The notes under the pieces are model-generated. The model had not been told where the DNA came from. It saw only the letters and a list, made by a program, of their open reading frames with translations, and made no database searches. Made by a program: the position numbers and the translations under genes. This document shows positions 12,536-64,000 of a stretch of DNA of 64,000 nucleotides, in pieces (the stretch's first letter is position 1; each line of letters begins with the position of its first letter). The DNA is taken from IMG/VR virus record IMGVR_UViG_3300021964_009390, positions 1 to 64,000 of that record. The stretch is one strand, 5' to 3'.

Positions 12536-12566
12536 TTAAACATAACTGGAGCTCATAAATAATGTT

Positions 12567-13193
12567 ATGAGTGATGAAGCTAGTATATTACGTACCGGTC
12601 CTTTGCAACCAGTCCAGCCACATGTGACGCGCCGCCGGGAGCGGATGATGGAACAGGACATGTCTGATACCGCGTTCAGACAAGAGCAAGCGATCAAGAA
12701 AAACAAAATAGGTGATGCAACTGCTGTGGTGGCGGACCAAGCAGAGGCCGCGGCGGATGCTGGTACACCGTTTACAAAAAAACAACTCGCCCAAACAGCA
12801 GTGGAGGTGCTTTCTCAGATGAATTTTGAAGTACCGTCTCAATCTGGGAAAATGATCGAACGAGACCCATCACAACAAGGTAGCCAATTTAGTTTACCAG
12901 AATACGGGTATTATATGGATTTGATAGAACTAGCAACAGAGGGTATACCTATTGAGTACCCAAAAGGTAACTTAACAACCAAAGGTGTGAAACCAGAGAC
13001 CCCGGAACGATTCCGGAATGTATTTGAAGGTGGTTTGAAAAAAGCTCGTAACCGGATAAGTGATGACCCGGAATTAAAAGAGGTGTTACCACAATATGTT
13101 AGAGAACAAAAATCCGGCATGCCAGTGCCATTGAGTATACCCAAACTAGACAATTTCACAAGCCTGAACCAATTTATCAACAGACATAGTTGA
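12567..13193 (+). CDS. Hypothetical late protein
   Basis: ORF with a TAAATA motif 5 nt upstream. Confidence 0.6.
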   Translation: MSDEASILRTGPLQPVQPHVTRRRERMMEQDMSDTAFRQEQAIKKNKIGDATAVVADQAEAAADAGTPFTKKQLAQTAVEVLSQMNFEVPSQSGKMIERDPSQQGSQFSLPEYGYYMDLIELATEGIPIEYPKGNLTTKGVKPETPERFRNVFEGGLKKARNRISDDPELKEVLPQYVREQKSGMPVPLSIPKLDNFTSLNQFINRHS

Positions 13194-13437
13194 AATATAC
13201 AATAACATACACTATATATTAGTGTATGAACCGATACTCATCGAACAAAAAATTCATAGTAACCATAAAAAACAAATGGTCTAACCAATCTAGAACCATT
13301 GTTTTATCCAGCGACAAGGACATCCGGGACCTGCACAAGTATGCATATTACAAACATACAAACAACCTCGAAGATATAACATCCATACAGAACACTGGTA
13401 AAAAAAATCTATTTACTTTACGTTCCGGGTTTAGAAA

Positions 13438-14487
13438 ATGACACGTACTGGTTATGTAGTTTTTTGTGAAGACAAAAAGTATCTGTTGTGGCAGACAGAA
13501 CTGTTGATACAGTCACTCACTAAGAGAGCTCAGGTGTCACGTGATGATATAGTGGTGTTATTTGCTGACCCAGCGTATCATAACAAGAACAACGAGTATA
13601 GTGTGTCACCGTACATGAGCGGCATGATATCGTGTTACTCACCTGCACGTTTCCATTGTGTTCAAAACTGGGGAAGGAAAAACTGGTATTACCGGTTCAA
13701 AGACGATGGTTCGTGGTACCCTAAACAATATCCCGGTATCAATAAATGGTTGAGTTTATGTGAAGCTGCAAATGCCGGTTGGTTAGACGACTTCGATGAA
13801 GTGCTACTGTTAGAACAAGATTTATGGTTCAGTGGTACAATACCAGAGTTACCACCAGGTAACTGCGCGACGGACAACTGGATAAACAACCGTTACCGGG
13901 CATTTGAAGTGACAGATAAAGAGGTGCATATGAACACTGTAGGCTTCGACTTGGATGACATAATGAAACTATGCAAAGTTCCACCATCAAGCAGAGAAAA
14001 ATGGGTAGGTGGAGCCATAATATTTAAATTTGTTACCGATCAATTGAAGAAGGGTAAGTTTTTAAACAGCATTGTGAATTACAACCAATTGCTCATGACG
14101 TTGGGAGAATTAGCACTACCTCAAGGCGCTCGCCACGAGACTGACATGGTGGCACCATCACTAGCGATGGCGCATTGTGGAATGGACTGCACTCTCATAC
14201 AAGATTTGCAATGGCGGTCAGATGTATGGACCTGGCATGAAGAACCACCAACCAACACAGTAGTACACTATGGATGGGATTTCGCACATTACCCACATTT
14301 GAAATGCCCATTTAGTAAATTTAAATACAACGAATCACTACCCTGGGATGACCGGGAAACCTTGCTATCTGGACAGTCTAGCACAACATATACATGGATG
14401 AAATCATTCATTGACGACCTACTAGAGGTAGGGGAAATACAAATGGATCGAACATGTAACAACCAAGTGTCTATACCTGTGATATAA
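13438..14487 (+). CDS. Putative glycosyltransferase resembling plant-type peptidyl O-glycosyltransferases (HPAT/SGT1-like)
   Basis: YLLWQTELLIQS, YPGINKW and EVLLLEQDLWF resemble YxxWQ / YxxxNKP / DxD-type motifs. Weak match, judged by eye. Confidence 0.4.
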   Translation: MTRTGYVVFCEDKKYLLWQTELLIQSLTKRAQVSRDDIVVLFADPAYHNKNNEYSVSPYMSGMISCYSPARFHCVQNWGRKNWYYRFKDDGSWYPKQYPGINKWLSLCEAANAGWLDDFDEVLLLEQDLWFSGTIPELPPGNCATDNWINNRYRAFEVTDKEVHMNTVGFDLDDIMKLCKVPPSSREKWVGGAIIFKFVTDQLKKGKFLNSIVNYNQLLMTLGELALPQGARHETDMVAPSLAMAHCGMDCTLIQDLQWRSDVWTWHEEPPTNTVVHYGWDFAHYPHLKCPFSKFKYNESLPWDDRETLLSGQSSTTYTWMKSFIDDLLEVGEIQMDRTCNNQVSIPVI

Positions 14488-14857
14488 TGACAGTGGCTGA
14501 ACTGTTTCGTAAAGGAGATGTAAAAGAATGTGTAGACACTTTAGTAGCCTTGCATCGTAGACATTATCACCACCCCGGTTACACGTTGAACAGCCGGTTG
14601 GTAAGAGAAAAATACACCGACAAATTCAACAATATCGCCTCCATGTCTGGAAAGTCTGAAGATACAATCACGATAAAATATGACGAAAACAGCAGTACAT
14701 ATCGTTTAAAATTTAAAAATCAATTGATTAGAGAGTTGAACATACAAGACAAACAGTTAGGTTCCGCTACTATAAATCATCATGAAACGGCACTGTCTGA
14801 TGAACAAATCATAACAGAAATTTTATTTGAAACTACATATTACACGCTATAAAGGTG

Positions 14858-14886
14858 TTGATATCACATGAAAAATAAACTATATA
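14858..14886 (+). promoter_or_regulatory. Sigma70-like promoter for the prkA operon
   Basis: TTGATA-17 nt-TATATA; the ATG follows 6 nt after the -10 box with no Shine-Dalgarno. Confidence 0.55.
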
Positions 14887-14892
14887 TATTAT

Positions 14893-16959
14893 ATGAGCCA
14901 ACAAGACATTTATAATTTATCCGACCTATTAACATCTACTGCATCAGAAACTGATTATGGTGCCTTGAATTGGACTGGTACTTTTGACGAATACCTGGAC
15001 ATAGTGAATGAAACTCCAAAAGTAACTAGGAACTCATATCAGCGTATGTATGACATGGTAATGTCCCATGGTACAGAGGAAGTCAATTACTGTAAACAAA
15101 CATATACAAAATATAAATTTTTCGCTAGCGGTAAGGATGGTGACATAAGTATTTACGGTTTGGAAGAACCGTTGATGGAACTTGTAGATGTATTGAGATC
15201 CGCTGCGTATCACTATGGACCAGAGCGCAGAATCATATTGCTGCACGGTCCAGTAGGTAGTAGCAAATCGACGATAGTAACCACATTGAAAAAGGGATTA
15301 GAACAATATTCAATCACCGATCCATTGTATTCATTCACCTGGTGTGTGGAAGATGATAATGGTACACCAGTTGAAGTTCCATGCCCCATGAATGAAGAGC
15401 CATTGAAATTGTTACCGGAAGCCGCTAGGAAGAACATTGTTGAACGTATCAACAATTCACTAGCCAACGATGATTATAGAATCAAACTAGATGGCAATTT
15501 GTCACCAGTGTCCGAGTTTTACAGAGATAAGTTGCTGAAAAAATATAACGGTGATTTTAACAAAGTACTATCACACGTCAAAGTGAGACGTGTTATATTG
15601 TCTGAAAAATCAAGAGTAGGTATAGGAACATTTCAACCGAAAGATGAAAAGAGTCAAGATGCTACTGAATTAACAGGCGACATAAACTACAGAAAGCTAG
15701 CTCAATATGGTAGTGAGAGTGACCCACGTGCTTTTGACTTTGATGGTGAATTTTTGATATCAAACAGAGGCATGGTTGAGTTTCAAGAGATCCTCAAATT
15801 GCAAACAGAGTTTTTGTACGACCTCTTGGGAGCCACGCAAGAGCATCGAGTCAAGCCTAAACGATTCAATCAAGTACCGATAGATGAAGTGATTATAGGT
15901 CACACCAACAACGCAGAATATGACAAGCTGAAAAACAATAAGTTCATGGAGGCTCTACGTGACAGAACCATAAAAATAGATGTACCGTACTTACTGAAAA
16001 TAAATGATGAGAAAAAAATATACGATTATTTCTACAATCAACACACGGTACACAAACACATCGCACCACATACTACATATCTTGCTGCGCTGTATGCAGT
16101 AGTGTCACGTCTAGAAAAACCGGTCAAGAATGACATGAGTATAATCCAAAAAGCAAAATTGTACAACGGAGTTGGTGTACATGGTTTCACAGAAGAACAT
16201 GTCAAGGAGATGTTAGAAGAGACACCTAACGAAGGTTTGTTGTCTGGTGTGAGTGCGCGTTTCATACAGAATCAATTTAGTAACGCTATTGTGAACCCTA
16301 GGATGGGTAAAAAAAGTATCAATCCTTTCATGCTGTTCTCGCAAATACGAGACGGTATCAAAAATTATTCCGGTTTCAACAGCGAGGATCTGCGCGCTGA
16401 AGCGTTAGAAAGATTGGAACTAGTCGAGAAAGAATATGACCGTATAGTGAAAAGAGAGGTACAACAAGCGCTCAGCAGTAGTGAAGAGGCCATCAAAACG
16501 TTGTGTACAAATTATATTGACAACGTTGTTGCTTTTGTAAACGATGAAAAGGTGACCAACCCCATTACTGGTAAAGATGAACCGGCTAATGAAAAGATGA
16601 TGAGATCTATTGAGGAAAAAATAAATGTCTCTACCAATATGAAAGAAGATTTCCGTCGTGAGATCATGAATTATATGGGTTCACTGGCAGCAAAAGGTAA
16701 GTCATTTAAATACGATAGTAACGAGCAATTGCATAAAGCCCTAGAAAAGAAGTTGTTTGAAGATATTAAAGACAGTATCAAACTATCCGCGCTGGCACAA
16801 GACACGGCCACTGTGGTAGACAAGGAGTTACTTGATAAAATCAACGCACTCAAGCAACGACTGGTGAAAGACTTTGGGTATGATGAAGATAGTGCTCATG
16901 ATGTTCTCGTGTATGTGGGGAGTATATTTGCCCGAGGTGACGACGTAGGAGACAAGTAA
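14893..16959 (+). CDS. prkA: PrkA/YeaG family AAA+ serine kinase
   Basis: LLHGPVGSSKST, GELxGDIN..L..YGSESDPRAFDFDGEF..SNRGMVEFQEILK, EALRDR, SGVSARF. Confidence 0.93.
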   Translation: MSQQDIYNLSDLLTSTASETDYGALNWTGTFDEYLDIVNETPKVTRNSYQRMYDMVMSHGTEEVNYCKQTYTKYKFFASGKDGDISIYGLEEPLMELVDVLRSAAYHYGPERRIILLHGPVGSSKSTIVTTLKKGLEQYSITDPLYSFTWCVEDDNGTPVEVPCPMNEEPLKLLPEAARKNIVERINNSLANDDYRIKLDGNLSPVSEFYRDKLLKKYNGDFNKVLSHVKVRRVILSEKSRVGIGTFQPKDEKSQDATELTGDINYRKLAQYGSESDPRAFDFDGEFLISNRGMVEFQEILKLQTEFLYDLLGATQEHRVKPKRFNQVPIDEVIIGHTNNAEYDKLKNNKFMEALRDRTIKIDVPYLLKINDEKKIYDYFYNQHTVHKHIAPHTTYLAALYAVVSRLEKPVKNDMSIIQKAKLYNGVGVHGFTEEHVKEMLEETPNEGLLSGVSARFIQNQFSNAIVNPRMGKKSINPFMLFSQIRDGIKNYSGFNSEDLRAEALERLELVEKEYDRIVKREVQQALSSSEEAIKTLCTNYIDNVVAFVNDEKVTNPITGKDEPANEKMMRSIEEKINVSTNMKEDFRREIMNYMGSLAAKGKSFKYDSNEQLHKALEKKLFEDIKDSIKLSALAQDTATVVDKELLDKINALKQRLVKDFGYDEDSAHDVLVYVGSIFARGDDVGDK

Positions 16960-18083
16960 TGCCCGGTCGCCGGATACGAGAAGATCACAGTGAATATCGT
17001 GATCTAATCAAAGACAAAGTAAAAAGCCGAGTCAAAGATCATATCAAAACCGGTAAAAAAGTCAAACGTCATGGGAAAGACTTGGTTGTTGTAGATATAC
17101 CTGTTATAGATCTACCGTCATTCCGCCATGGGAAAAGTAAATCTGATGGTGGTGTAGGTAACGGTCCAGTGGATGTAGGGGACGAAGTAGGTGATGGTCC
17201 ACAACAACCCGGAAAGGGTCAAGCTGGTGATCAACAAGCGGAGCATACAATGGGTGTAGGTGTTACTGTCGAAGACTATATTGATGTACTAGGTGATGAA
17301 CTAGAATTACCACGTCTAGTACCTAAACTGAGAGGTGATATAATAAATCAAAAGGTCAAATATAACGGTATTAGTCGAGTTGGTAACAATTGTCTGCTAC
17401 ATAAAAAGAAGACATTGAAAAATGCAATGAAACGCGTGATGTCTACCGGGTTATATAATCCTGACAATATATCTAATGTGTACCCAATAACACAAGACAA
17501 GGTATATAAAACATGGAACGTTGTTGACTCACCGGACATAAACGCAGTAGTATTTTTTTTACAGGATATAAGCTGGAGTATGGATGGTGAGAAAAGAGAT
17601 CTAGTAAGAGAACTATGCTGGTATCTGGAACAATGGATAAGAAAATTTTACAATCAAGTCGATTTAAAACATATTGTACACGATGTAGTGGCTCAAGAAG
17701 TTGATCAAGAAAAATTTTACAGTTTTGAAGCTGGAGGTGGTACCAAGATAAGCTCCGCCTTCGAATTGACGTCGGATATTATAGATAGTTCCTACCCGGC
17801 CGAGGATTGGAACATGTATGTCTTTTATTTCTCCGATGGTGAAAATTTTTCAAATGACACTAAGAGATGTATACAGTTATTAGAACAATTGCAAACCAAA
17901 TGCAATTTGATAGGGGTTGGAGAAGTCAAAGGTGTTACGGATTGGGCCGATTTCGCGCTATCAATAGAAGAGGAAATAGACAATAAAGTCCTAGACGAGG
18001 GTGTTATAACCACAAGCTCGATCGATTCACATGATGATGTGTTACGCGCAATTCAAGAATTTTTATCACCGGTTTCACGATGA
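16959..18083 (+). CDS. yeaH: YeaH/YhbH (DUF444) vWA-domain protein
   Basis: Gly-rich linker, MIDAS-like DISWS, GGTKISSA, YFSDGEN; translationally coupled to prkA. Confidence 0.9.
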   Translation: MPGRRIREDHSEYRDLIKDKVKSRVKDHIKTGKKVKRHGKDLVVVDIPVIDLPSFRHGKSKSDGGVGNGPVDVGDEVGDGPQQPGKGQAGDQQAEHTMGVGVTVEDYIDVLGDELELPRLVPKLRGDIINQKVKYNGISRVGNNCLLHKKKTLKNAMKRVMSTGLYNPDNISNVYPITQDKVYKTWNVVDSPDINAVVFFLQDISWSMDGEKRDLVRELCWYLEQWIRKFYNQVDLKHIVHDVVAQEVDQEKFYSFEAGGGTKISSAFELTSDIIDSSYPAEDWNMYVFYFSDGENFSNDTKRCIQLLEQLQTKCNLIGVGEVKGVTDWADFALSIEEEIDNKVLDEGVITTSSIDSHDDVLRAIQEFLSPVSR

Positions 18084-19690
18084 GACGTACAACATCTAGC
18101 AATTTATTACAACAGGGTGTAGGTACCGAGCTAGCCAAGCAAATCCCGGAGATCATTGATGTATGTAAAAAGGAAGGATTGGACCCATACGAACTGGTTA
18201 TTGAAGAATATACTGCTGACGAGATTGCGGAACTAGGAGCCTATGGTGGGTTCCCCGTGAGATACCCACACTTTTCATTTGGTCAGCAATACGAAACATT
18301 ACACCACCAGTATCACAGTGGTATGGGTAAGATATATGAAATGGTTGTGAATAACGATCCTACATACATGTATTTGCAGCGAAACAATCCAATAGTGGAC
18401 AATTTGACAGTTGTCGCTCATGCATTAGCACATTCTGATTTTTTTAAAAATAATATATACTTTGGTAACACCAACCGAAACATGATGAATGTGATGGCTA
18501 ACCATGGTCAAAAAATCCGGCAGTATATGAATATATACGGTAAATCTCGAGTGTCTAAATTTTTAGATGCCTGTTTGTCTGTCGATGATTTAATAGACCC
18601 GAACATTGTGTGGTCGGATCAACAATATAACAAACCTACAATAACGGAATTTGCACCACCGATAGAACAATTCACTCCGAAGCGTATAGGTACCAATCAT
18701 TACATGGACCATTATGTGAATACAGCCAAATTTTTAGAGAAGCAGCATAAATCACATTTGAGACAAAAAGCTCGCGCAGACAGTAAATATCCTTTGAAAC
18801 CAGTGAAAGACATACTGTTGTTCATACTACAACATGTCCGAATGGAACGCTGGCAGCAAAACATATTATCCATGGTACGTGACGAGAGCATCTATTTCCG
18901 TCCGCAAATGTTGACAAAAGTGTTAAACGAAGGTTGGGCTAGTTACTGGGATAGTTACATCATGACCAAATGTGGTTACGCAGGTGATGAAGGTATAATA
19001 CAATACGCGCAACACCATTCAGGGGTGTTAGGTGGTAAATATGCAATGAGTAACCCGTACAGATTGGGTAACTGTTTGCTCCGTCATGTGGAGGATCGAT
19101 GGAACAAAGGGCAGTTCGGCCGGGCATGGGACAACTGTGATGACGAATTCAAAAGAAAATCATGGGACACTAAAGCTAGTCAAGGTCGCGACAAAATATT
19201 TGAAGTTCGTCGCGATTATAATGACGTTAATTTTATAAACGAATTTTTTACACCGGAATTTTGTGACGAGCATGAATATTTTGAATACCAATTGGACCCG
19301 GAAACAAACAAATACGTGGTTGTGAGCAAGGATTATGACAAAATTAAATCTAAATTGCTGCAACGTTACACGAATGGTGGTCGCCCTAGTATAGTGCTCA
19401 CAAATTTTGACAAGTCTGGTATAGAATTGAGACATCGGTATGAAGGCATGGAACTAGAGAGTAATTATGTTGAAAGTACCATGAAGATGTTGTATAATAT
19501 TATAAATATGCCAATTGTATTGAAATCCAAAGCGTATGTATCTAAAAAGAAAAAGGTATATGGTGCAGTGTTTGCTGTCGCGGAAGAGGAAGAAGAACTA
19601 TGTGGTCGTGTGTTTAAATATGATGGTAAGACGTTCAAGTCATGGGAAGACTACAAACAACGTGACTTTCCCAACTACCAAATTACATGA
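18080..19690 (+). CDS. spoVR: SpoVR/YcgB family protein
   Basis: GGFPVRYPHFSFG, IYEMVVNNDP, AHALAHSDFFKNN, TKVLNEGWASYW, NPYRLG. Confidence 0.93.
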   Translation: MRRTTSSNLLQQGVGTELAKQIPEIIDVCKKEGLDPYELVIEEYTADEIAELGAYGGFPVRYPHFSFGQQYETLHHQYHSGMGKIYEMVVNNDPTYMYLQRNNPIVDNLTVVAHALAHSDFFKNNIYFGNTNRNMMNVMANHGQKIRQYMNIYGKSRVSKFLDACLSVDDLIDPNIVWSDQQYNKPTITEFAPPIEQFTPKRIGTNHYMDHYVNTAKFLEKQHKSHLRQKARADSKYPLKPVKDILLFILQHVRMERWQQNILSMVRDESIYFRPQMLTKVLNEGWASYWDSYIMTKCGYAGDEGIIQYAQHHSGVLGGKYAMSNPYRLGNCLLRHVEDRWNKGQFGRAWDNCDDEFKRKSWDTKASQGRDKIFEVRRDYNDVNFINEFFTPEFCDEHEYFEYQLDPETNKYVVVSKDYDKIKSKLLQRYTNGGRPSIVLTNFDKSGIELRHRYEGMELESNYVESTMKMLYNIINMPIVLKSKAYVSKKKKVYGAVFAVAEEEEELCGRVFKYDGKTFKSWEDYKQRDFPNYQIT

Positions 19691-21308: not shown

Positions 21309-21542
21309 TTTATACTACAGATATATAAATATACACATGGAAATAGATCGTATAGAGGTCAAAAAAATTATTGAACAAGAGGTAAAACCTAATGAAAATT
21401 TAATAGTATGGACAGATGCATATATACGAGGTATAAAAAAAACATTCGATGAGCAAAAATTAGTGTATAATGTGGAGTCAGAAGTTGCTAAACAACGTAT
21501 CATAACGTACGTTATGGAACGTCTAGAAAACGAACTCAGAGA

Positions 21543-21881: not shown

Positions 21882-21888
21882 AGGTACA

Positions 21889-23834: not shown

Positions 23835-23853
23835 TTGGAGACTAAATAAACAT

Positions 23854-24033: not shown

Positions 24034-24036
24034 AGC

Positions 24037-51497: not shown

Positions 51498-51505
51498 TAG
51501 TGTAA

Positions 51506-52874: not shown

Positions 52875-52887
52875 AATAAATAAGTAT

Positions 52888-54383: not shown

Positions 54384-54396
54384 AATAAATATATGT

Positions 54397-55948: not shown

Positions 55949-56381
55949 AAAATTTCATGAAAACCGAGAGGGTTGCCCAAAAGCAACACAGGACCTAGAA
56001 CTGAACACCAAGAACAGGAACGCCACAAGAGAAAACCACATGTACGGTCCGTTGAACCCGGCCATGCCCAGCAAAGATTACTGGCAAAAGATCGCTGACA
56101 AATGGGGCTCTAGTGTGGAAGAGGCCATGAACAGTCGATGTGCCAATTGTGTAGCGTTTGACAAATCCCCTCGTATGAAAGATTGCTTACCGATGTCTGA
56201 CGAGAAGATGCATTGGTCATATCACGACATGCCGGGGTTCGATCAAGACCCAGAGTTTGGCTATTGCTGGATGCATCACTTCAAATGTTTCAACGGCCGG
56301 ACTTGTGACACCTGGGCCACCGGCGGGCCTATAACAGATGATGAAACATCTAAAAAGTGGCAAGAAAAAAACCAGTCATGA
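55935..56381 (+). CDS. Putative virion protein (MRTFKKFHE N-terminus), Cys-rich
   Basis: CPKATQD, YGPLNP, CANCVAFD. Confidence 0.6.
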   Translation: MRTFKKFHENREGCPKATQDLELNTKNRNATRENHMYGPLNPAMPSKDYWQKIADKWGSSVEEAMNSRCANCVAFDKSPRMKDCLPMSDEKMHWSYHDMPGFDQDPEFGYCWMHHFKCFNGRTCDTWATGGPITDDETSKKWQEKNQS

Positions 56382-57604
56382 AAACGTTCAAACAATTTTT
56401 TTACGAAAACAGAGAGTATCAAGTAGATGACTTTCAGCAAGAAGAATATCTAGAGTATCAGAGCGAGTTTGTATATGATTATGAAGCCATGATGGGCTTA
56501 CCACATGATAAACTAGCCAGTATCATAACCAAAGCCGGTAACAAACGTTTCTCTGCAACCATTGATGGTGTGGATCCATCTGTTGATGGTACTGAGCATT
56601 ATTATGTCGTTACTGATCGTGACGTGTTGAAAAATATAGCGTCATTGATTGCTAGTACAGGTGAGCCACATCATGAGGAATTCGCCATGGGTGTTGGTAC
56701 TGGTGATAGTTTTGAATTCATGGTACGTTTACCCAAATCCGGTTTCACCGGTGAAGAGATTGGTGACATGCAAGTGTTTCTTGTAACACCAGGAGGTTCT
56801 GATCAGCTACATGCACTACTATCTCAAGTGAGAGAAGGTTTATGGACCAACATCAACGCCAAGAAAAAACGCGGAGGCAAGAGTGCCAAGAAAGGCAGCA
56901 AAGCTTACAAAGCAGCCAAGAAAGCTGGTGACAAGCTAGAAGCCACAAAAGAAAGTGTATGGAAACCGGGAGATTTAGGTGTTCAGAATTGGGGTGAGTA
57001 TGAAGCAGGTGGTCGGCATGCTGAACTAGGAGCCATCGAACCTCATATGGAGAAAATCCCAGGTCCGGATCGTGTGGTAGCGCACATGAACGGATTGCAG
57101 AATGAATACATGAGAGTGTTAAAAACCCGGAAATCCAACCCAGATGTGAAGGACAACTACAAGTATGTCCGCAACAATATAGATCAAGCCATACAGATGA
57201 TGAATCAGACGACAGGTGGAGAAACCGAATCAAGAAGAAGCATCATACAAGACATCCACATTGCAGGATTTGCAGCACGTAGATACATACGAGCAATTGA
57301 ATCAGGTGAAACTAATCAAGCTTATTACAAGAGATTGTTGAATCATCTGCGTGACGCGGCTGATGCCATGGAGGGATTGATCGAACAAGAGGTTGAAGGA
57401 GAACTTGGTGGATGGAATGTCAATGAAAATTTCAAGGACGGCAAGAAAAAAGGCAAGAGCCGTCCGGGTCGAGTCAAAAGAGCCGGGGCCAGTTGCAACG
57501 GCAGCGTCACAAGTTTACGTAAAAAGGCCAAAGCCGGTGGTGAGAAGGGCAAGATGTACCACTGGTGCGCCAACATGAAGAGTGGGAGGAAGAAGAAAAA
57601 ATAA
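56378..57604 (+). CDS. Modular putative virion polyprotein (MKTFKQFFYE N-terminus)
   Basis: Acidic domains alternate with basic modules EGLWTNIN... and ENFKDGKKKG... Confidence 0.65.
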   Translation: MKTFKQFFYENREYQVDDFQQEEYLEYQSEFVYDYEAMMGLPHDKLASIITKAGNKRFSATIDGVDPSVDGTEHYYVVTDRDVLKNIASLIASTGEPHHEEFAMGVGTGDSFEFMVRLPKSGFTGEEIGDMQVFLVTPGGSDQLHALLSQVREGLWTNINAKKKRGGKSAKKGSKAYKAAKKAGDKLEATKESVWKPGDLGVQNWGEYEAGGRHAELGAIEPHMEKIPGPDRVVAHMNGLQNEYMRVLKTRKSNPDVKDNYKYVRNNIDQAIQMMNQTTGGETESRRSIIQDIHIAGFAARRYIRAIESGETNQAYYKRLLNHLRDAADAMEGLIEQEVEGELGGWNVNENFKDGKKKGKSRPGRVKRAGASCNGSVTSLRKKAKAGGEKGKMYHWCANMKSGRKKKK

Positions 57605-57667
57605 TGATTAGACCAAGTTTAATTAATACTATAAATAGTATGGAAAAAAATTGCAATATCACTTGAA

Positions 57668-58390
57668 ATGAGATCAAAAAAACATATTTTAGTTTTAGGT
57701 GACTCACATGCAAATAAGTTTTTTAGCTCTACCAAACTAGCAACCGGGGCCCAGAAACAACCGGATAGAATAATAAACGCTTTACAACCTGACTTTAGAT
57801 TCGATACCGTGGTCTGCCCGGGCGCGACTGCTCAGGGTGCAGTAAATCCTACATCCAAAACAAAAGCACTTGAAACATTTAAAAAGAAATTGAGTAAAAT
57901 AAATCCAGACGATTATGATTACATTGCAATTATGTTGGGTGAAGTAGATTGTGGTTTCGTAATTTGGTATCGTGCGGAAAAATACTCGATATCGGTTGAG
58001 GAACAATTGAATTTGTCGGTAAACAATCTGTTTGAATTTATTCGGAATGAAGTGCTTTTAAAGTTTAAACCAAAACAAGTTATCGTTATGGGAAGTGTTT
58101 TGCCTACCATAAAAGACGATCAAGATTGGGGTGAAGTTTGTCATCTTAGAAGTTCCGTAAAAGCAACTCAACTCGAAAGAACAAATTTGACACTAAGATA
58201 CAATTGTATATTGAAAGAAGAGTCGTGTAAACTAGGTTATAATTATATTGATATTACAGATGAGACAATCGATAAACATACAGGTTTAATTGGTGACAAA
58301 TACATAAATAGTAACGAATTTGACCACCACCTGCCTTTCAAAAAAACATGGAAGTTTTTTTATACCAAATTAATTAAATTAACAAAATGA
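57668..58390 (+). CDS. SGNH/GDSL-like hydrolase or acyltransferase
   Basis: LVLGDSH, G.TAQG, GEVDC, DHH. Confidence 0.65.
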   Translation: MRSKKHILVLGDSHANKFFSSTKLATGAQKQPDRIINALQPDFRFDTVVCPGATAQGAVNPTSKTKALETFKKKLSKINPDDYDYIAIMLGEVDCGFVIWYRAEKYSISVEEQLNLSVNNLFEFIRNEVLLKFKPKQVIVMGSVLPTIKDDQDWGEVCHLRSSVKATQLERTNLTLRYNCILKEESCKLGYNYIDITDETIDKHTGLIGDKYINSNEFDHHLPFKKTWKFFYTKLIKLTK

Positions 58391-58496
58391 AAACATTTAA
58401 ACAATATTAGATATGAAATACAAATTTACAAAAAATTGGTTCGATGACTCAGCAATAAAAAAAATAACATATAAGTTGCGGATTAGTCAAAATACC

Positions 58497-58504
58497 TATA
58501 AATA
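58497..58504 (+). promoter_or_regulatory. Canonical T4-type late promoter TATAAATA upstream of DUF1501
   Basis: Exact match, 8 nt before the ATG. Confidence 0.6.
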
Positions 58505-58512
58505 TATAGTAT

Positions 58513-59781
58513 ATGAATGATTTAAGCCGCCGCGAATTTGTAAGTACAGTTGCCAAAAGCTGTTTAGGAGTGAGCGCCATACTGAGCGCTCAAGATTTAT
58601 TAGCAATCAAACCCACCGGGCAGATACCAACCGCTCGGAATGTTATATTTTTATACATGGCAGGAGGCATGACTCACATCGACACGTTCGACCCAAAACC
58701 GGAGAACAGTGACGTGATGGGTGAAACAACTGCCATTGACACTACAGCGGACGGGGTACAGATAGGCAACTGGTTACCCAACACCGCCAAACAGATGCAC
58801 AACGCAAGTTTGATACGTACATTGTCGTCCAATCAAGGTGCACATGCACAAGCCAACTATTTGTTACACACCAGCTACCAACGCCGCGGCACGATCGTGC
58901 ATCCAACCATGGGTGCATGGGTGAGCAAACAGACACCCAAACTGAATCGATCGTTACCATCTAACGTGAGAATCAACGGAGGTAGCGACATATTAGGTTC
59001 CGGTTATTTGGAGAAAAAACACGGACCGTTACCATTGGGTAACCCCAACGCAGGTATACAAAATGTGTCACAGGCCAAGTATCTGGACGAGACCATGTAC
59101 AACAAACGGATGGACATATCCAGCAAATTCAACAAAAATTTCTTAGACATGTTCCCACAAAAGCAAGTACGTGCATACACTGATTTATATGATGATGCCA
59201 TCCGGTTGATGAAAAGCACAGATCTTGAAGCGTTCGATCTGACAAAAGAAGACCAAGCCACTCGAGACATGTACGGTACCAACAGTTTTGGTCAGGGCTG
59301 CCTATTAGCTAGACGGTTGGTTGAGACTGGTGTACGTTATGTCGAGGTGCAGCTAGGTGGTTGGGACATGCACAACGATGTGTTTGGTAACATGGAGACA
59401 CGAGGTGCTACATTGGACAATGGATTGGCTTCGTTGTTACAAGATTTGAACCGTCGTGGTCTGTTGAGCTCCACACTAGTTGTTGTGGCGAGTGAATTTG
59501 GTCGTACACCAGAGGTCAAAGCAGGCCGCGTGGGACGTGACCATCACCCATCTGCATTCAGCGCCATGTTGGCCGGAGGAGGAGTCAAAGGAGGTTACGT
59601 ACATGGCAAGAGCGACAAGCGTGGTCACTATGTAGAAGAGAAAGGTGTGAAAATGGAAGATCTGAACGCCACGATTGCTTACATGATGGGAATGGACATC
59701 ACTGAAACAATCTATTCTCCAAGTGGCAGACCATTTAAAATTGCTAATGCGGGTGAGGTTGTAACTGACATTTTAGCATAA
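58513..59781 (+). CDS. DUF1501 protein with twin-arginine (Tat) signal
   Basis: LSRREFV, VIFLYMAGGMTHIDTFDPKP, FGQGCLLARRLVETGV..VEV..GGWD.H, SEFGRTP, GRDHHP, GGGVKGG..G.SD. Confidence 0.93.
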   Translation: MNDLSRREFVSTVAKSCLGVSAILSAQDLLAIKPTGQIPTARNVIFLYMAGGMTHIDTFDPKPENSDVMGETTAIDTTADGVQIGNWLPNTAKQMHNASLIRTLSSNQGAHAQANYLLHTSYQRRGTIVHPTMGAWVSKQTPKLNRSLPSNVRINGGSDILGSGYLEKKHGPLPLGNPNAGIQNVSQAKYLDETMYNKRMDISSKFNKNFLDMFPQKQVRAYTDLYDDAIRLMKSTDLEAFDLTKEDQATRDMYGTNSFGQGCLLARRLVETGVRYVEVQLGGWDMHNDVFGNMETRGATLDNGLASLLQDLNRRGLLSSTLVVVASEFGRTPEVKAGRVGRDHHPSAFSAMLAGGGVKGGYVHGKSDKRGHYVEEKGVKMEDLNATIAYMMGMDITETIYSPSGRPFKIANAGEVVTDILA

Positions 59782-59789
59782 ATAATGAC

Positions 59790-60215
59790 ATGCACGACAA
59801 AGACCACCACCTGATATGGGAATCATATTTTGATGAGACTGTAGCCACACCTAAAAACATTGAACGTGTGAGGTCCACATTGAACGATCCGGACCTGCAA
59901 GAACATGAACGACAGCTCATAATAGACACGTTACGCGAGCTAGAGAGACTAGCCACAACACAAGACATCAAAACTGTCAAGCAGAGCATCATGGACAAGC
60001 TGGGCAAGATGCTAGGACGTGAGCGAGTCAATGAACAGGGTAACTATGCCCGGATTGTGGCGGATGAAGAAAAGTTTTTAGAAATAGCGTACAAGTATTA
60101 CGGAGACATGGAAGAAGCCGAGCTGAAATTCCACCACTATGTACTGGAGGAGTTGCTAGAGATGGACGAGCTGACACGTCGCGAGTATCAAGGCCAAGGA
60201 CCACAGCGAGACTAA
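59790..60215 (+). CDS. Putative virion protein (DHHLIWESY N-terminus)
   Basis: Late motif 5 nt upstream. Confidence 0.6.
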   Translation: MHDKDHHLIWESYFDETVATPKNIERVRSTLNDPDLQEHERQLIIDTLRELERLATTQDIKTVKQSIMDKLGKMLGRERVNEQGNYARIVADEEKFLEIAYKYYGDMEEAELKFHHYVLEELLEMDELTRREYQGQGPQRD

Positions 60216-60216
60216 C

Positions 60217-60519
60217 ATGCATAACGGTACAGACATACGGAGCATATATGATATCTACTCCGGTAACAGCTCGTTGATTACCGAGTCTAAAGAGCAACCA
60301 GGTGAGATACCTGAGCTAGGTATTCGAGTGATACGTAACGAACATGGTGATAATGATGGTGACAGATATTATGAAACGTGGGAAGTATATCCCATAGATA
60401 ACACATCTGGTACTGGAGCACCATTGGATTGGGACTACGCCGGAGGGACTGAAACCATTGACGAGGTGGTAGCCAGAGTCAAAATGAATTTCAAAACAAG
60501 AGGAACACCAACATTATGA
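60217..60519 (+). CDS. Putative virion protein
   Basis: DIRSIYDIY..LITE N-terminus; in an operon with its neighbours. Confidence 0.5.
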   Translation: MHNGTDIRSIYDIYSGNSSLITESKEQPGEIPELGIRVIRNEHGDNDGDRYYETWEVYPIDNTSGTGAPLDWDYAGGTETIDEVVARVKMNFKTRGTPTL

Positions 60520-61043
60520 AAGATAAAGATCAACAATTAATATGGGAATCATACATTCGAGAGAATGAATATGGACCCAGTGGAGCACCTAGTATCAATG
60601 TATCAGATTGGAAATTAGAATCATGGTACAAACAAGACGATTGGGATGACAATCCAAACCCATGGGACCGGTATGTTGATGACGTGCTAGGTGACATATA
60701 TCAAGATATCCAAGAATATGGAGTAGAGTCTGACCGAGTGTATGTCGCGTTTTTCGGTCCACCTCGAGGAACTGCTGATTACGAGCAATGGACCGACCCG
60801 GGTATTGTGGTGGCTTTTGGAAACAATTCAGAAGAATACGGAGGAGACACGTTCAATTCGAAAGGTATATTTGTTGATAATGATGGAGAAGGTGAGAGTT
60901 TTGTATTACCATCACAACAACTAGAAGAATTGCTCAAAGTTAACAACCGAGCAATAGACGATGAAGTCACTAGTGACGAAGACTACAAGACTTGGGACCC
61001 ATACGGTCCAGAAGGTGTCGTGAGTAGAAGCGATTTTTACTGA
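60516..61043 (+). CDS. Acidic putative virion protein (DQQLIWESY N-terminus)
   Basis: Shares its N-terminal motif with the gene at 59790. Confidence 0.6.
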   Translation: MKDKDQQLIWESYIRENEYGPSGAPSINVSDWKLESWYKQDDWDDNPNPWDRYVDDVLGDIYQDIQEYGVESDRVYVAFFGPPRGTADYEQWTDPGIVVAFGNNSEEYGGDTFNSKGIFVDNDGEGESFVLPSQQLEELLKVNNRAIDDEVTSDEDYKTWDPYGPEGVVSRSDFY

Positions 61044-61078
61044 GTAAACATATAAGGAGGTACACCAACCAAACATAC

Positions 61079-63163
61079 ATGATTGACGAACATTTTCTCA
61101 CCAGTGTTGAAGTATTCACCAGCAAATGGTCTACATTCTGCAAAATACACAAAGTACCAAACGGGATATTGACATCAGAAAATTTCATGAGTTTTTGTGA
61201 CGCCACCGGGATTGAATATCATTCCCGGTTTGACATATGCACACAAGACCAGAAACTCATGCATTCGTTGATGTGTTACTTGCGTACAGACGAGTTACGA
61301 GACAAAACGAAAAACGTGAAGACCATCAGATCCACTGAAAATTTGGCTATAATGATGGAGGATCGAGTGTTACCACACCTGGAGTTCATGATTCGTAACA
61401 CTGTACATTTACTACCCAAAGATTTTGCTCACATGATCGTGTGTACTGACAAATCATACGATCAGATACGTGACATATGTGACAACATATGCGAGAACAT
61501 CATGGTGATGAGCTGCAAAGAGAGCTGTATAACACAGAACATATACAACAATTTGTTCATGAGCAAATCTTTTTGGAGCGGTATTGAATATGAAAACATA
61601 TTGGTGTATCAACAGGACACCTGTTTGTTCCGACCCGGGATCGCAAAGTTCATGCAATATGATTATGTAGGTGCACCGTGGCCTGGTATGAGCGATGACA
61701 ATGTGATAGGGGTGGGTAACGGTGGCTTGTCATTTCGCCGGCGGAGCAAAATGTTACAATGTTTAGATGTCGTAAAACCGCAAGATTTTGTATCCGGTCG
61801 CACCACCAGAGGTTACATGTTGAGGTGCAAATTAGATCATGTACCAGAGGATGTGTATTACAGTTCAACCATGATACTACATGGTGTGGGGAGAGTGGCT
61901 CCCCGAGCGGTGGCCAATCAATTTTCACAAGAGTGTGTGTTACATGACAATCCGTTTGGTGGTCATCAATACTGGCTAGGTCATGTACAATTGCATGATG
62001 AAAAACGTGGCAAGCTGTTGTTGATAGACGACAATTTCGCGTATGACTCGCAAGGTCAAGGCTTCAACCGCGCTAAAACTGTGGTGGAAATGCTATGCAA
62101 AATGTTCCATGTGACTTTCATGCCAACTAACTATCGACCATGTGATCATGATCGAATAGAACATTACCATACGTTGGGTGTGAATGTGGTGCTGGAGCGT
62201 CGCGATCATCATGGTATGAAAATATTTGATGTGGTGGGTGAACATATAAAGCAACATGCCGGTGAATACGATGTGATATATTTCAGCCGACCTCACAACT
62301 TTGGATATGTGATAGATTACTGCCGCGAGCATTCTCCATCTAGCAAAATAGTGTATGATGCAGAAGCGTTGTTTTACAAGCGTATACAAGCTCAATACAA
62401 CACCACCGGGCAGATCAGCATCTGGCCACCATGTGACACACCGTCACAGCAAGTGGTGGATCAAGAGAAGGCAAAAGAATTTGACATGTTGTCCAAAACG
62501 GACAATGTTATTGTTGTGTCAGATTCAGAACGTGAAAGTGTGGTCAAAAACGTACCGGCTTTGAAGGGTAAAGTTGCAGTGTATGGACATGCTATACCAC
62601 CTCGACCTACCGATAACAACTATCATGAGCGAGCGCACATGCTGTTTGTAGGTTCTTTCGGTAAGGATGACACACCCAATTCTGACGCCATGATACATTT
62701 TGTGAACAACATGTTTGACAAGATACATGAACGTACCGGTAGCAAATTGTACATCATAGGTACAAACCCAACCGAGACCATTTTGTCTCTGACCAGTGAC
62801 AAGGTGGAGGTTCTAGGTTATGTAGAGGACATAACACCGTACTACAATAATTGTCGATTGTTTGTGGCCCCACATCGCTTCGCCGGAGGTATACCATGGA
62901 AAATATCGGAATCCATGTCGAGAGGTTTACCGGTCGTCATCACAAAACTACTGGCCGATCAGTTGGGTATCGGGAGAGAATGTTGCGGTGTGGGTGATAA
63001 CGATACTCAATTCATAAACCAAGCGGTACAAATATACAACTACTCAACCCGGTGGGACAATTGTAGGAACAAAAGCTTACAATACATAAAAAACACACAT
63101 GACCCCATGACACATAGAAAGCAGCTACTAAACAGTATAAACAAGGCATTAAAAACACCATGA
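61079..63163 (+). CDS. DUF5672 domain fused to a GT4-like glycosyltransferase
   Basis: YDYVGAPW...VGNGGLSFR, PEDVYY, PFGGH; C-terminal LFVGSF...N.DA, VAPHRFAGG..K..E.M..GLPVV. Confidence 0.8.
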   Translation: MIDEHFLTSVEVFTSKWSTFCKIHKVPNGILTSENFMSFCDATGIEYHSRFDICTQDQKLMHSLMCYLRTDELRDKTKNVKTIRSTENLAIMMEDRVLPHLEFMIRNTVHLLPKDFAHMIVCTDKSYDQIRDICDNICENIMVMSCKESCITQNIYNNLFMSKSFWSGIEYENILVYQQDTCLFRPGIAKFMQYDYVGAPWPGMSDDNVIGVGNGGLSFRRRSKMLQCLDVVKPQDFVSGRTTRGYMLRCKLDHVPEDVYYSSTMILHGVGRVAPRAVANQFSQECVLHDNPFGGHQYWLGHVQLHDEKRGKLLLIDDNFAYDSQGQGFNRAKTVVEMLCKMFHVTFMPTNYRPCDHDRIEHYHTLGVNVVLERRDHHGMKIFDVVGEHIKQHAGEYDVIYFSRPHNFGYVIDYCREHSPSSKIVYDAEALFYKRIQAQYNTTGQISIWPPCDTPSQQVVDQEKAKEFDMLSKTDNVIVVSDSERESVVKNVPALKGKVAVYGHAIPPRPTDNNYHERAHMLFVGSFGKDDTPNSDAMIHFVNNMFDKIHERTGSKLYIIGTNPTETILSLTSDKVEVLGYVEDITPYYNNCRLFVAPHRFAGGIPWKISESMSRGLPVVITKLLADQLGIGRECCGVGDNDTQFINQAVQIYNYSTRWDNCRNKSLQYIKNTHDPMTHRKQLLNSINKALKTP

Positions 63164-63945
63164 AAAAATATAAAGACAACTTTTTAATTATGTGCGAGTC
63201 ACGGACCGGTAGTACCATGTTGAGTACTGCACTCTGGAACCATCCGCAGGTGTGCATGCATGGAGAGATATTGCAACCTCGGCAGTTCAATAAACAAAAA
63301 CGCGATGACAAATTAGAATTTTTCGGGCTGAGCTACGATACACCAGGAGCTTTGCTCGATCTGTTACGTGATGAGCTGGTGAATGATCCGGTAAAATATA
63401 TAAGCAGGTACGGTTTCTATACCGGTAGATACAAACGTGGAGGTTTCAAATTTAAATATGAAGAGATGTCATGTGGATTGTTTGATCCAGTATTAGAGTT
63501 TATAGTCACACATCCGGAGATCAAAATAATACATTTGACCCGGGACAATCTGTGGCACCGGTATAGATCTTCATATGTAGCCACAAAAATTACAAAACAA
63601 TACAACTCGGTAACAGACACGATATCAATCGATACTGACACTGACAAGGTCAAATTGAATATACAAGATATTGAATCGAGTTTCAAGCGGACAGTTCAAT
63701 GGCAAAGGAAATATAGAAACATGTTCAAACACCATGCGATGTTAAACATAACATACGAATCACTCCTGGCTGACCCGCAAGGAACTTTTGACCAAGTGAC
63801 CGGTTTCTTAAAAATATCCAACCAAAAATGGAAACCATGGACAAAGCAAGTACAACCAGTACAGGACGATGACATAATCCGAAACATGGATAAGATCAGA
63901 GAGCATTTCATTTCCAGTAAATACGGTGTATATTTCGATAAATAA
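63160..63945 (+). CDS. Sulfotransferase (Stf0/Sulfotransfer_3-like)
   Basis: SRTGSTML...LWNHPQV..HGE, IHLTR.N, YE.L. Confidence 0.8.
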   Translation: MKKYKDNFLIMCESRTGSTMLSTALWNHPQVCMHGEILQPRQFNKQKRDDKLEFFGLSYDTPGALLDLLRDELVNDPVKYISRYGFYTGRYKRGGFKFKYEEMSCGLFDPVLEFIVTHPEIKIIHLTRDNLWHRYRSSYVATKITKQYNSVTDTISIDTDTDKVKLNIQDIESSFKRTVQWQRKYRNMFKHHAMLNITYESLLADPQGTFDQVTGFLKISNQKWKPWTKQVQPVQDDDIIRNMDKIREHFISSKYGVYFDK

Positions 63946-64000
63946 TATTATTGATGAATCTTAAAAAAAAATAAATACTATTATATCAATATGGACAGCT

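What the first reader, a model, noticed from the sequence alone, without database searches (positions are those of the whole stretch)
12541..64000. CCGG looks strongly over-represented rather than avoided
Seen, counted by hand: 7 CCGG in 12541-13200 (versus 1 GGCC) and 7 in 26041-26460 (versus 0 GGCC), where roughly one per several hundred bp is expected at this AT content. CCGG persists even in the extremely AT-rich gene at 24961-25908 (2 sites). CTAG, GTAC and CGCG also look common. Phages usually deplete 4-bp palindromes. Inference: the genome is shielded from restriction, and CCGG may be positively selected as a modification, methylation or packaging motif.
Basis: partly seen in the sequence, partly recalled or inferred. 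Interest (0 to 1): 0.62.

Follow-up and report, generated by a model that had tools for sequence, protein, structure and literature searches.

The report
Real CCGG excess in deazaguanine-modified phage
An uncultured marine T4-like phage really does carry about three times more CCGG sites than its composition predicts, no CCGG methylase explains it, and just upstream lies a gene set predicted to replace guanine with a 7-deazaguanine base, which would explain why restriction-type palindromes are tolerated but not why CCGG is enriched.

Summary
CCGG is the most over-represented of all 256 tetranucleotides in the window (282 observed, 93 expected) and in the whole 222-kb phage genome (1016 observed, 330 expected). 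The refutation test fails. The z-score is 26.5 under a second-order Markov model, 25.7 under synonymous-codon shuffling, and 22.5 when protein, codon usage and every dinucleotide are preserved.

The excess appears in all three codon phases and in non-coding DNA, and has no flanking context. Individual sites are not conserved with near relatives, so what is maintained is site density, not site position.

I found no C5 or N4/N6 DNA methyltransferase, dCMP hydroxymethylase, Vsr or HpaII nuclease. At 8930-12535 there is a DpdA3 transglycosylase, DpdN formyltransferase, kinase and QueF cluster. It is syntenic with Flavobacterium phage immuto, whose dG is fully replaced by fdPreQ1. The "shielded" inference is therefore supported, but through a different chemistry.

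The cluster does not explain the enrichment. It is shared across the clade, yet CCGG ranges from 0 to 3 times expectation among relatives. My preferred cause is a lineage-specific mutational or repair drive linked to a site-recognising enzyme. Selection for site density is the main rival. The mechanism is unresolved.

The parts
1..64000 (.). Genome-wide CCGG over-representation. The window holds 282 sites, about 4.4 per kb, and the same density continues through the remaining 158 kb of the genome.
   Evidence: The excess is present in codon phases 0, 1 and 2 (1.39x, 2.04x, 2.65x) and in non-coding DNA (33 against 13.9). Flanking bases are near background.
12541..13200 (.).
   Evidence: At the genome rate 3.0 sites are expected, P = 0.03. 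The ORF has no Pfam or PHROG match.
26041..26460 (.).
   Evidence: At the genome rate 1.9 sites are expected, P = 0.004, which is unremarkable among roughly 500 such windows.
8930..9730 (+). DpdA3-type DNA guanine transglycosylase, predicted to insert a 7-deazaguanine base into DNA.
   Evidence: [quoted passage not shown] AlphaFold2 pLDDT is 92.8. The top 50 Foldseek PDB hits are all tRNA-guanine transglycosylases, probability 1.00. Pfam TGT itself does not match.
9727..10272 (+). DpdN-like formyltransferase, predicted to convert preQ1/dPreQ1 to fdPreQ1.
   Evidence: PF00551 match. 44% identity to the immuto formyltransferase that PMC10516641 names DpdN. It sits downstream of DpdA3 in the same gene order as in immuto, where one short hypothetical ORF lies between them.
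10597..11064 (+). MazZ-like dATP/dGTP diphosphohydrolase domain protein. In this data set it occurs only in this genome and L071 (the available L008 piece does not cover the region).
   Evidence: PF18909, E 7.5e-22, and phrog_801. Absent from G008, G015, G017, G019, G007 and G001. Present at 75% identity in L071.
11080..11637 (+). Nucleotide (thymidylate-like) kinase belonging to the modification cluster.
   Evidence: AAA_28 and phrog_2107 matches. 30-32% identity to the kinases next to DpdA3 in immuto and CP220.
11621..12535 (+). Bimodular QueF, the preQ0 to preQ1 reductase.
   Evidence: QueF_N and QueF domains. 49% identity to immuto QueF.
50991..51497 (+). Second, short QueF-like protein.
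   Evidence: PF14489, E 1e-17. Weak tblastn match to immuto QueF.

Best explanation
Shown: the window belongs to a complete 222-kb uncultured estuarine/marine T4-like phage. In it CCGG is enriched at the level of duplex DNA. The enrichment is about 3x over base composition and 1.3-1.8x over every codon, dinucleotide or trinucleotide control. It occurs in all codon phases, on both coding strands and in intergenic DNA, as a bare 4-bp palindrome. It is maintained as a density of about 4.6 sites per kb, not as conserved positions.

Shown by gene content, inferred for chemistry: the phage encodes a DpdA3 transglycosylase, a DpdN formyltransferase, a kinase and QueF, plus FolE, QueD and QueC. By analogy with Flavobacterium phage immuto it probably replaces most or all dG with 7-(formylamino)methyl-7-deazaguanine. 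That would make G-containing restriction sites uncleavable and remove the usual selection against short palindromes.

Inferred, my preferred mechanism for the excess itself: once avoidance is lifted, a lineage-specific, site-directed mutational or repair bias keeps converting near-cognate words into CCGG wherever protein sequence allows. This bias would be linked to an enzyme that recognises CCGG on phage DNA, most plausibly a methyltransferase/repair activity of the particular host lineage. CATG, CTAG and CGCG would be affected to a lesser degree. This is the same kind of ratchet proposed for methyltransferase-associated over-represented palindromes in cyanobacteria. Different sub-lineages of the phage clade, meeting different hosts, end up enriched or depleted for different palindromes.
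For: Reality and DNA-level nature:
- The excess survives every control.
- Within each codon family only the CCGG-forming choice is raised. CCG is 36% of Pro codons before G against 13-14% before A or C. NCC is 40-46% before Gly against 11-19% elsewhere. CGG is 26% of Arg codons after C against 6-8% otherwise.
- Non-coding DNA holds 33 sites against 13.9 expected.
- Context biases are strand-symmetric, r about 0.5.
- Of the 16 CNNG words, all four palindromes are enriched (1.30-1.79x); non-palindromic ones reach at most 1.21x (CCCG, CAAG).

Density rather than position:
- 30% of CCGG sites are shared with L008, against 33% for all 4-mers. Sharing is lower still with L005 and L012.

Lineage dependence:
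- The near relative L008 repeats the CCGG/CTAG/CATG triple signature.
- Relatives range from 0 of 18 expected (L067) to 3.1x.
- High and low states each need at least 4 changes on the capsid tree.
- Other lineages enrich other classical restriction-modification palindromes, such as TGCA, CATG, GATC and AGCT.
- Host-like, probably recently acquired genes and the capsid gene have the lowest excess.

Shield:
-, and PMC10516641.
- No 5- or 6-mer avoidance.

Precedent for enzyme-linked palindrome excess:
- rCCGGy together with its cognate methyltransferase in Oscillatoria, and the mismatch-repair ratchet model (PMC4390886).
- Unexplained CCGG excess in Helicobacter genomes carrying CCGG R-M systems (PMC4687349).
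Against: - No CCGG-recognising enzyme was identified in the phage. There is no C5 or N4/N6 methyltransferase, Vsr or HpaII nuclease, although 184 of 285 ORFs are lineage-specific and mostly unannotated.
- The host is unknown. Loci from the best candidate donors, marine Opitutia/Verrucomicrobiota, show no Markov-corrected CCGG excess and are CTAG-poor.
- A very-short-patch type T:G repair predicts depletion of CTGG/CCAG. They are at 1.12x and 0.97x.
- If all G is hypermodified, host methyltransferases and repair nucleases may not act on this DNA at all.
- The DNA modification itself is inferred from homology. QueE (radical SAM) was not found.
- Nothing here separates a mutational drive from selection for site density.
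Confidence: 0.4

Rival explanations
1. CCGG density is positively selected because a phage-encoded protein uses the site. This is the reader's idea in general form: a modification, binding, nicking, priming or packaging motif that works anywhere in the genome, so number matters and position does not.
For: - The excess is uniform across core and accessory genes and both strands, at 1.67-1.93x.
- In 5-kb windows CCGG density is independent of local GC (Spearman 0.06), while GGCC, GCCG and CGCG scale with GC.
- Amino-acid adjacency also contributes more than in relatives. The ratio of synonymous-shuffle to codon-permutation expectation is 1.32 against 1.06-1.19.
- Many lineage-specific ORFs of unknown function could encode the reader protein.
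Against: - No candidate protein was found.
- Sites are not conserved and spacing is not regular. The gap CV is 1.17 and variance/mean is 1.6 in 5-kb windows.
- The function would have to be gained and lost at least 4 times in the clade, and reversed to strict avoidance in L067.
- At gene level, density does rise with GC.
- Several unrelated palindromes are enriched together.
Confidence: 0.25
2. CCGG, more generally C-N-N'-G, is the preferred substrate context of the dimeric DpdA3 transglycosylase in this sub-lineage. The genome has evolved to enrich the context in which its guanines are modified fastest.
For: - Other DpdA families are motif-specific: GA and GGC in CAjan, GA in iggy (titles and abstracts of PMC7544227 and PMC10484667).
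- Five of the six large relatives examined carry the DpdA3 cluster (in G001 only QueF/QueC were seen in the fetched part) and have a CCGG synonymous-shuffle ratio above 1.2.
- The symmetry requirement fits a dimeric enzyme.
Against: - DpdA3 phages studied so far replace all G (PMC10516641).
- The immuto and CP220 pieces show no CCGG excess.
- Lineages with the same cluster are CCGG-depleted: L080, L044, L038, L042.
- Recognition that accepts all four self-complementary centres but rejects non-palindromic ones is odd for a protein.
Confidence: 0.1
3. The excess is a by-product of translation or mRNA-level selection (codon-pair bias, tRNA effects, RNA structure) or of amino-acid and composition quirks. 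Under this view it is not a DNA-level feature.
For: - Because CCGG is a palindrome, sense and antisense cannot be told apart.
- CTAG enrichment is confined to coding DNA.
- Phage intergenic DNA is also transcribed.
Against: - The excess is present in all three phases, with the largest ratios at phases 1 and 2.
- It survives a shuffle preserving protein, codons and dinucleotides, z 22.5.
- It is present in non-coding DNA at 2.4x.
- Non-palindromic biases in the same genome are strand-symmetric.
Confidence: 0.03

Closest known systems
Over-represented palindromes tied to DNA methyltransferases in cyanobacteria (HIP1 GCGATCGC; rCCGGy in Oscillatoria PCC 10802), Elhai 2015, PMC4390886
   Same: A short restriction-type palindrome containing CCGG is far above expectation genome-wide. 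It is lineage-specific, and its sites are spread through coding DNA. A mutational ratchet has been proposed as the cause.
   Different: In the cyanobacteria a cognate methyltransferase is encoded in the same genome, whereas none is found in this phage. Here the unit is the bare 4-mer with no rCCGGy-type extension. The genome is viral and probably G-hypermodified.
CCGG over-representation in Helicobacter genomes carrying CCGG R-M systems, Rusinov et al. 2015, PMC4687349
   Same: The same word is over-represented despite being a restriction target, and the authors state they have no explanation.
   Different: The Helicobacter excess is milder (Kr about 1.4-1.5), occurs in a cellular genome and comes with an annotated R-M system. 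Here the order-2 Markov ratio is 1.8, the ratio to base composition is 3.1, and no R-M gene is present.
Very-short-patch repair shaping CCWGG-related word frequencies in E. coli (Bhagwat & McClelland 1992; Merkl et al. 1992; recalled from memory, not read here)
   Same: It shows that a site-specific repair enzyme can raise the frequency of its own recognition word and lower that of its precursors.
   Different: No Vsr is present in the phage. The predicted precursors CTGG and CCAG are not depleted.
[quoted passage not shown] 2023, PMC10516641
   Same: DpdA3, DpdN, kinase and QueF are homologous at 30-49% identity and lie in the same order. FolE, QueD and QueC are also present.
   Different: The virion lineage is different (T4-like Gp23 capsid). 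There is an extra MazZ-like diphosphohydrolase, and QueE was not found. The 50-kb immuto piece examined has no CCGG excess. The chemistry is untested here.
Restriction-site avoidance in phage genomes, Rusinov et al. 2018, PMC6286503
   Same: It concerns the same class of words and the same statistics. Relatives of this phage do show classical avoidance: L067 has 0 CCGG against 18 expected.
   Different: The sign is opposite in this genome.

Membership tests
DpdA3-type 7-deazaguanine DNA modification system (fdPreQ1 type) | A DNA transglycosylase of the DpdA3 subfamily with a TGT fold | tested here: met
   The ORF at 8930-9730 is 44% identical to immuto DpdA and to the CP220 homologue. Model pLDDT is 92.8, and all top-50 PDB fold matches are tRNA-guanine transglycosylases.
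DpdA3-type 7-deazaguanine DNA modification system (fdPreQ1 type) | preQ0 synthesis genes FolE, QueD and QueC | tested here: met
   QueC at genome 171139-171849 matches PF06508 with E 2e-60. FolE at 152295-152906 is 53% identical and QueD at 148097-148516 is 40% identical to the immuto proteins.
DpdA3-type 7-deazaguanine DNA modification system (fdPreQ1 type) | QueE (radical-SAM CDG synthase) | tested here: not met
   No tblastn match to immuto QueE and no PF04055 match. It may be supplied by the host or be too divergent to detect.
DpdA3-type 7-deazaguanine DNA modification system (fdPreQ1 type) | QueF and a DpdN formyltransferase next to DpdA3 | tested here: met
   The gene order is the same as in immuto.
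DpdA3-type 7-deazaguanine DNA modification system (fdPreQ1 type) | The modified nucleoside is actually present in virion DNA | not testable with these tools
   All runs holding the phage are kept as assembled contigs. No mass spectrometry or native-signal data are available.
HpaII/MspI-type CCGG methylation | A C5 or N4 cytosine DNA methyltransferase encoded in the genome | tested here: not met
   PF00145, PF01555 and PF02086 have no match at E <= 1 in the complete genome, while the searches do hit the control genomes. PF00145 is absent from 29 relatives.
HpaII/MspI-type CCGG methylation | Methylated cytosine at CCGG in phage DNA | not testable with these tools
   This needs bisulfite, SMRT or nanopore data.
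Methyltransferase-associated over-represented palindrome (HIP-like) | A palindrome far above Markov and codon-corrected expectation, genome-wide | tested here: met
Methyltransferase-associated over-represented palindrome (HIP-like) | A cognate methyltransferase acting on the same DNA | tested here: inconclusive
   None is encoded in the phage. The host is unidentified, and the candidate Verrucomicrobiota loci carry no such signature.
VSP-repair-driven word bias | A Vsr endonuclease and depletion of the T:G precursor words | tested here: not met
   No PF03852 match. CTGG is at 1.12x and CCAG at 0.97x.
Restriction-site avoidance | Under-representation of the site | tested here: not met
   The sign is opposite in this genome. 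Avoidance is met in relative L067, with 0 of 18 expected.

The most novel reading that the evidence does not exclude
A G-hypermodified phage lineage has turned from avoiding restriction-type palindromes to accumulating them. CCGG (with CATG, CTAG and CGCG) would be enriched because a phage enzyme works at C-N-N'-G dyads. That enzyme could be the dimeric DpdA3 transglycosylase or an unrecognised partner among the 184 lineage-specific ORFs. The genome would then have been selected or driven to multiply its own modification sites. This would be the first case of a virus enriching, rather than depleting, such motifs as part of its anti-defence chemistry.
Probability: 0.12. Interest if true: 0.8.

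Novelty: new variant of a known kind. Interest (0 to 1): 0.58.

Why it matters
Phage genomics usually reads short palindromes as a record of restriction pressure, seen as avoidance. Here the sign is reversed and the effect is very large. Within one clade of uncultured marine phages, the same words swing from complete avoidance to three-fold excess.

If the excess is a drive linked to a site-specific enzyme, tetranucleotide palindrome profiles could report which methyltransferases or repair systems a phage meets. That would make them a host-linkage signal. It would also give a viral test case for the unexplained CCGG excess of Helicobacter and the HIP-type palindromes of cyanobacteria.

If the excess is selected, it points to an unknown CCGG-reading function in a DpdA3 phage.

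Independently of that, the window adds a large, environmentally abundant T4-like clade to the short list of DpdA3/DpdN (fdPreQ1-type) phages. The DpdA3 family alone has more than 3,000 homologues in the metagenome protein set.

Tried and rejected
Cytosine modification as the cause:
- No C5 methyltransferase, N4/N6 methyltransferase, Dam-type methyltransferase or ThyA/dCMP-hydroxymethylase family member.
- Z-base pathway rejected: no PurZ.

Phage-encoded Vsr or HpaII nuclease: none.

A longer motif hiding behind CCGG:
- Flanking bases are near background, and the hexamer palindromes ACCGGT, TCCGGA and CCCGGG are only 1.1-1.2x beyond what CCGG itself predicts.
- No 5- or 6-mer has |z| above 5.

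Host amelioration:
- DUF1501 homologues point to marine Opitutia/Verrucomicrobiota.
- Their loci have CCGG Markov ratios of 0.8-1.2 and are CTAG-poor.
- The true host remains unknown.

A general property of G-replaced DNA: the immuto and CP220 pieces show no CCGG excess, and clade members with the same cluster range from depleted to enriched.

Regular spacing or a ruler: gaps are slightly over-dispersed.

Positional conservation: none.

The substitution partners of CCGG in near relatives are mostly inner-position variants, as expected from which positions are synonymous, so they do not diagnose a mechanism.

Strain variation from public runs:
- All holders are kept as contigs.
- Only 40 of 327 differences were listed, and none touches a CCGG, where about 0.8 hits were expected. 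This is uninformative.

Neighbouring unknown ORFs:
- 13438-14487 looks glycosyltransferase-like (HPAT/DUF7164 neighbours).
- 12567-13193 has no lead.

Megablast of 7.5 kb of the window against GenBank phages found nothing.

I fetched the records and counted locally instead.

No alternative genetic code was used.


Full report
**What the window is**

The window is bases 1-64000 of a single 222,461-bp IMG/VR virus record rated complete. It encodes a Gp23-type major capsid protein (4150-5706), a prohead protease and a scaffold protein. The capsid is only about 33% identical to those of cultured T4-like cyanophages, and megablast finds no GenBank phage. IMG/VR holds hundreds of relatives with 65-88% capsid identity. 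The same sequence occurs in estuary and marine metagenomes from several studies.

**The observation**

CCGG occurs 282 times in the window against 93.5 expected from base composition, and 1016 times in the genome against 330. GGCC, with the same composition, occurs 73 and 238 times.

Under a second-order Markov model, which corrects for di- and trinucleotides, CCGG is the top word of 256, with z 13.4 in the window and 26.5 in the genome.

I called 285 ORFs with a simple longest-ORF rule, giving 94% coding, and ran three shuffles:
- Synonymous codons shuffled within each gene: 983 observed, 552 +/- 17 expected, z 25.7, rank 1.
- Codons permuted within each gene: 414 expected, z 31.
- A strict shuffle keeping protein sequence, codon counts and every dinucleotide count. 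This freezes phase-0 sites by construction: 741 +/- 11 expected, z 22.5. Phase 1 is 398 against 239 and phase 2 is 192 against 109.

**Anatomy of the signal**

- The excess is in all three codon phases, at 1.39x, 2.04x and 2.65x.
- Within each codon family only the choice that creates CCGG is raised. CCG is used for 36% of prolines when the next base is G, against 13-14% before A or C, while ACG, TCG, GCG and the others show no such rise. NCC codons reach 40-46% before glycine, against 11-19% elsewhere. CGG is 26% of arginine codons after a C, against 6-8% after other bases.
- Non-coding DNA has 33 sites against 13.9 expected.
- Flanking positions are near background. At k = 5 and 6 nothing exceeds |z| 5 once shorter words are accounted for. 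The unit is the bare 4-mer.
- Of the 16 words C-N-N-G, all four palindromes are enriched: CCGG 1.79x, CTAG 1.73x, CATG 1.39x and CGCG 1.30x. The non-palindromic ones lie between 0.69x and 1.21x.
- CCGG, CATG and CTAG are ranks 1, 2 and 3 of all 256 words.
- Context biases of non-palindromic words are mirrored between a word and its reverse complement, r about 0.5. This shows that DNA-level forces dominate context bias in this genome.
- The excess is similar in core and accessory genes and on both strands, at 1.67-1.93x. It is lower in host-like genes, at 1.37x. By base-composition ratio, the capsid gene is also among the lowest (1.24x).
- In 5-kb windows CCGG density does not follow local GC (Spearman 0.06), while GGCC, GCCG and CGCG do. 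At gene level density does rise with GC.
- Spacing is slightly over-dispersed, not regular.

**Density, not position**

About 20 kb of near relatives (82-88% capsid identity, 73-78% DNA identity) align to window positions 200-8000. CCGG sites are shared no more often than average 4-mers: 30% against 33% with L008, 18% against 42% with L005 and 27% against 40% with L012. Yet L008 independently shows the same triple signature, with CCGG 37 against 23, CTAG 40 against 21 and CATG 47 against 32. The pressure therefore maintains number, not places.

**The clade**

- Over the 47 related loci of 8 kb or more, CCGG observed/expected runs from 0 (L067) to 3.1 (L027). By codon shuffle L067 has 0 against 18 expected, z -5.5.
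- Six large relatives give synonymous-shuffle ratios of 1.66, 1.25, 1.21, 1.21 and 0.74 for the five tested. Other palindromes are enriched or depleted in other lineages: CATG at 1.47x in G001, TGCA with z 7-8 in L080 and L038, and GATC and AGCT elsewhere.
- On a capsid tree the high and low states are clustered but each needs at least four changes.
- Short restriction-type palindromes are thus "hot" in both directions in this phage group, and the window's lineage is the extreme CCGG-rich case.

**What is not there**

The complete genome has no match to C5 DNA methylase, N6/N4 methylase, D12 Dam, thymidylate-synthase/dCMP-hydroxymethylase, PurZ, Vsr or HpaII endonuclease families. The same searches do hit the control genomes. 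Twenty-nine related records also lack a C5 methylase.

**What is there: a guanine-replacement system**

- 8930-9730 encodes a protein with no Pfam match and no PF01702 hit. [quoted passage not shown] Its AlphaFold2 model (pLDDT 92.8) matches only tRNA-guanine transglycosylases among the top 50 PDB folds.
- Downstream come a PF00551 formyltransferase 44% identical to immuto's DpdN, a MazZ-like dATP/dGTP diphosphohydrolase domain protein, a nucleotide kinase and a bimodular QueF.
- The order DpdA3, DpdN, kinase, QueF is the same as in immuto.
- FolE, QueD, and QueC with a neighbouring amidotransferase lie elsewhere in the genome. QueE was not found.
- Cui et al. 2023 (PMC10516641) showed that immuto DNA contains no detectable dG. 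It contains 7-(formylamino)methyl-7-deazaguanine instead and resists restriction enzymes whose sites contain G.
- By homology, the phage here probably does the same. This fits the absence of any avoided 4-, 5- or 6-mer.

The chemistry itself is untested.

**Why the shield does not explain the excess**

The cluster is found in five of the six large relatives examined (in G001 only QueF and QueC were seen in the fetched part) and is also found in CCGG-depleted lineages. Pieces of immuto and CP220 show no CCGG excess. Something specific to the sub-lineage must add the enrichment.

**Mechanism**

Two families of explanation fit the anatomy: a directional mutational or repair bias, and selection for site number. 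I lean to an enzyme-linked drive for four reasons.
- Several unrelated classical restriction-modification palindromes are enriched together.
- Different lineages enrich different ones.
- The trait flips repeatedly, including to strict avoidance.
- The only known precedents for over-represented restriction-type palindromes are associated with cognate methyltransferases or R-M systems. These are the HIP-type words including rCCGGy, with a proposed mismatch-repair ratchet (PMC4390886), and the unexplained CCGG excess in Helicobacter (PMC4687349).

Four points weigh against the drive.
- No enzyme has been found.
- The candidate host group shows no such signature.
- The precursor words predicted by very-short-patch repair are not depleted.
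- Hypermodified DNA may be a poor substrate for host enzymes.

Selection for density is the main rival, and it includes the attractive idea that DpdA3 prefers C-N-N'-G dyads. An mRNA or translation-level origin is essentially excluded. My confidence in the combined statement is 0.4. The descriptive parts are far more secure than the causal part.

**Limits**

- ORFs were called by a simple rule, not a trained gene finder. The Markov and non-coding results do not depend on the ORF calls.
- Host assignment rests on one auxiliary gene.
- Comparisons with immuto and CP220 used one 50-kb piece each.
- Public runs are held as contigs, so neither modification nor within-population frequencies could be read.

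Noticed in passing
window 32277-32660 (+): The phage encodes a full-length tmRNA gene. It scores 90 bits against Rfam RF00023, and ARAGORN predicts a tag peptide ending in ALLAA.
   Followed up: partly
window 14893-19690 (+): A PrkA / DUF444 / SpoVR trio, a bacterial stress or sporulation-type operon, is carried by the phage and is absent from six large relatives.
   Followed up: partly
window 49004-51052 and 58513-59781 (+): The phage carries PSCyt2/PSD1 (DUF1549/DUF1553) and DUF1501 proteins, a pair typical of Planctomycetes and Verrucomicrobia. The best genomic relatives of the DUF1501 protein are marine Opitutia/Puniceicoccaceae MAGs at 50-58% identity, which hints at the host. These genes have among the lowest CCGG excess in the genome.
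   Followed up: partly
window 5766-9008 (-): An 820-aa ClpB-like double AAA+ chaperone and an HNH endonuclease are inserted between the capsid gene and the DpdA3 cluster. Both are absent from the six large relatives.
   Followed up: no
window 10597-11064; CP220 record 53542-56035 (L207); immuto record 33370-36093 (L206): In three distant phages a nucleotide phosphohydrolase (MazZ-like, HD-domain or 'hydrolase') and a thymidylate-kinase-like gene flank DpdA3. This conserved module would fit some nucleotide-pool step in complete G replacement, although the literature describes insertion as post-replicative.
   Followed up: no
L067 (IMG/VR relative, 13.8 kb): This relative has zero CCGG sites against about 18 expected (z -5.5), which is textbook restriction avoidance. 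The deazaguanine cluster is not seen within 10 kb downstream of its capsid gene.
   Followed up: partly
L207 (Campylobacter phage CP220, 30000-79999): CATG is almost absent, with 4-5 sites against about 53 expected (z about -9), despite reported complete G replacement in that phage group.
   Followed up: no
window 19687-22548, 29457-31646, 53415-55948, 61079-63945: The window holds many sugar-chemistry genes: NeuB, a cytidylyltransferase, GDP-mannose dehydratase, a mannose-6-phosphate isomerase-type cupin, large multi-domain glycosyltransferases and a sulfotransferase. The target, whether virion, host surface or DNA, is unknown.
   Followed up: no
window 51894-52907 (-) and 1077-1532 (+): A UvdE UV-damage endonuclease and a small TnsA-N-like (restriction-fold) endonuclease are present. 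Neither was tested for any link to the palindrome bias.
   Followed up: no
whole clade (G000, G008, G015, G017, G019, G001, G007): All clade members share strand-symmetric word biases: CACC/GGTG is over-represented, and CTTA/TAAG and AACC/GGTT are under-represented. This background signature is separate from the CCGG effect.
   Followed up: partly
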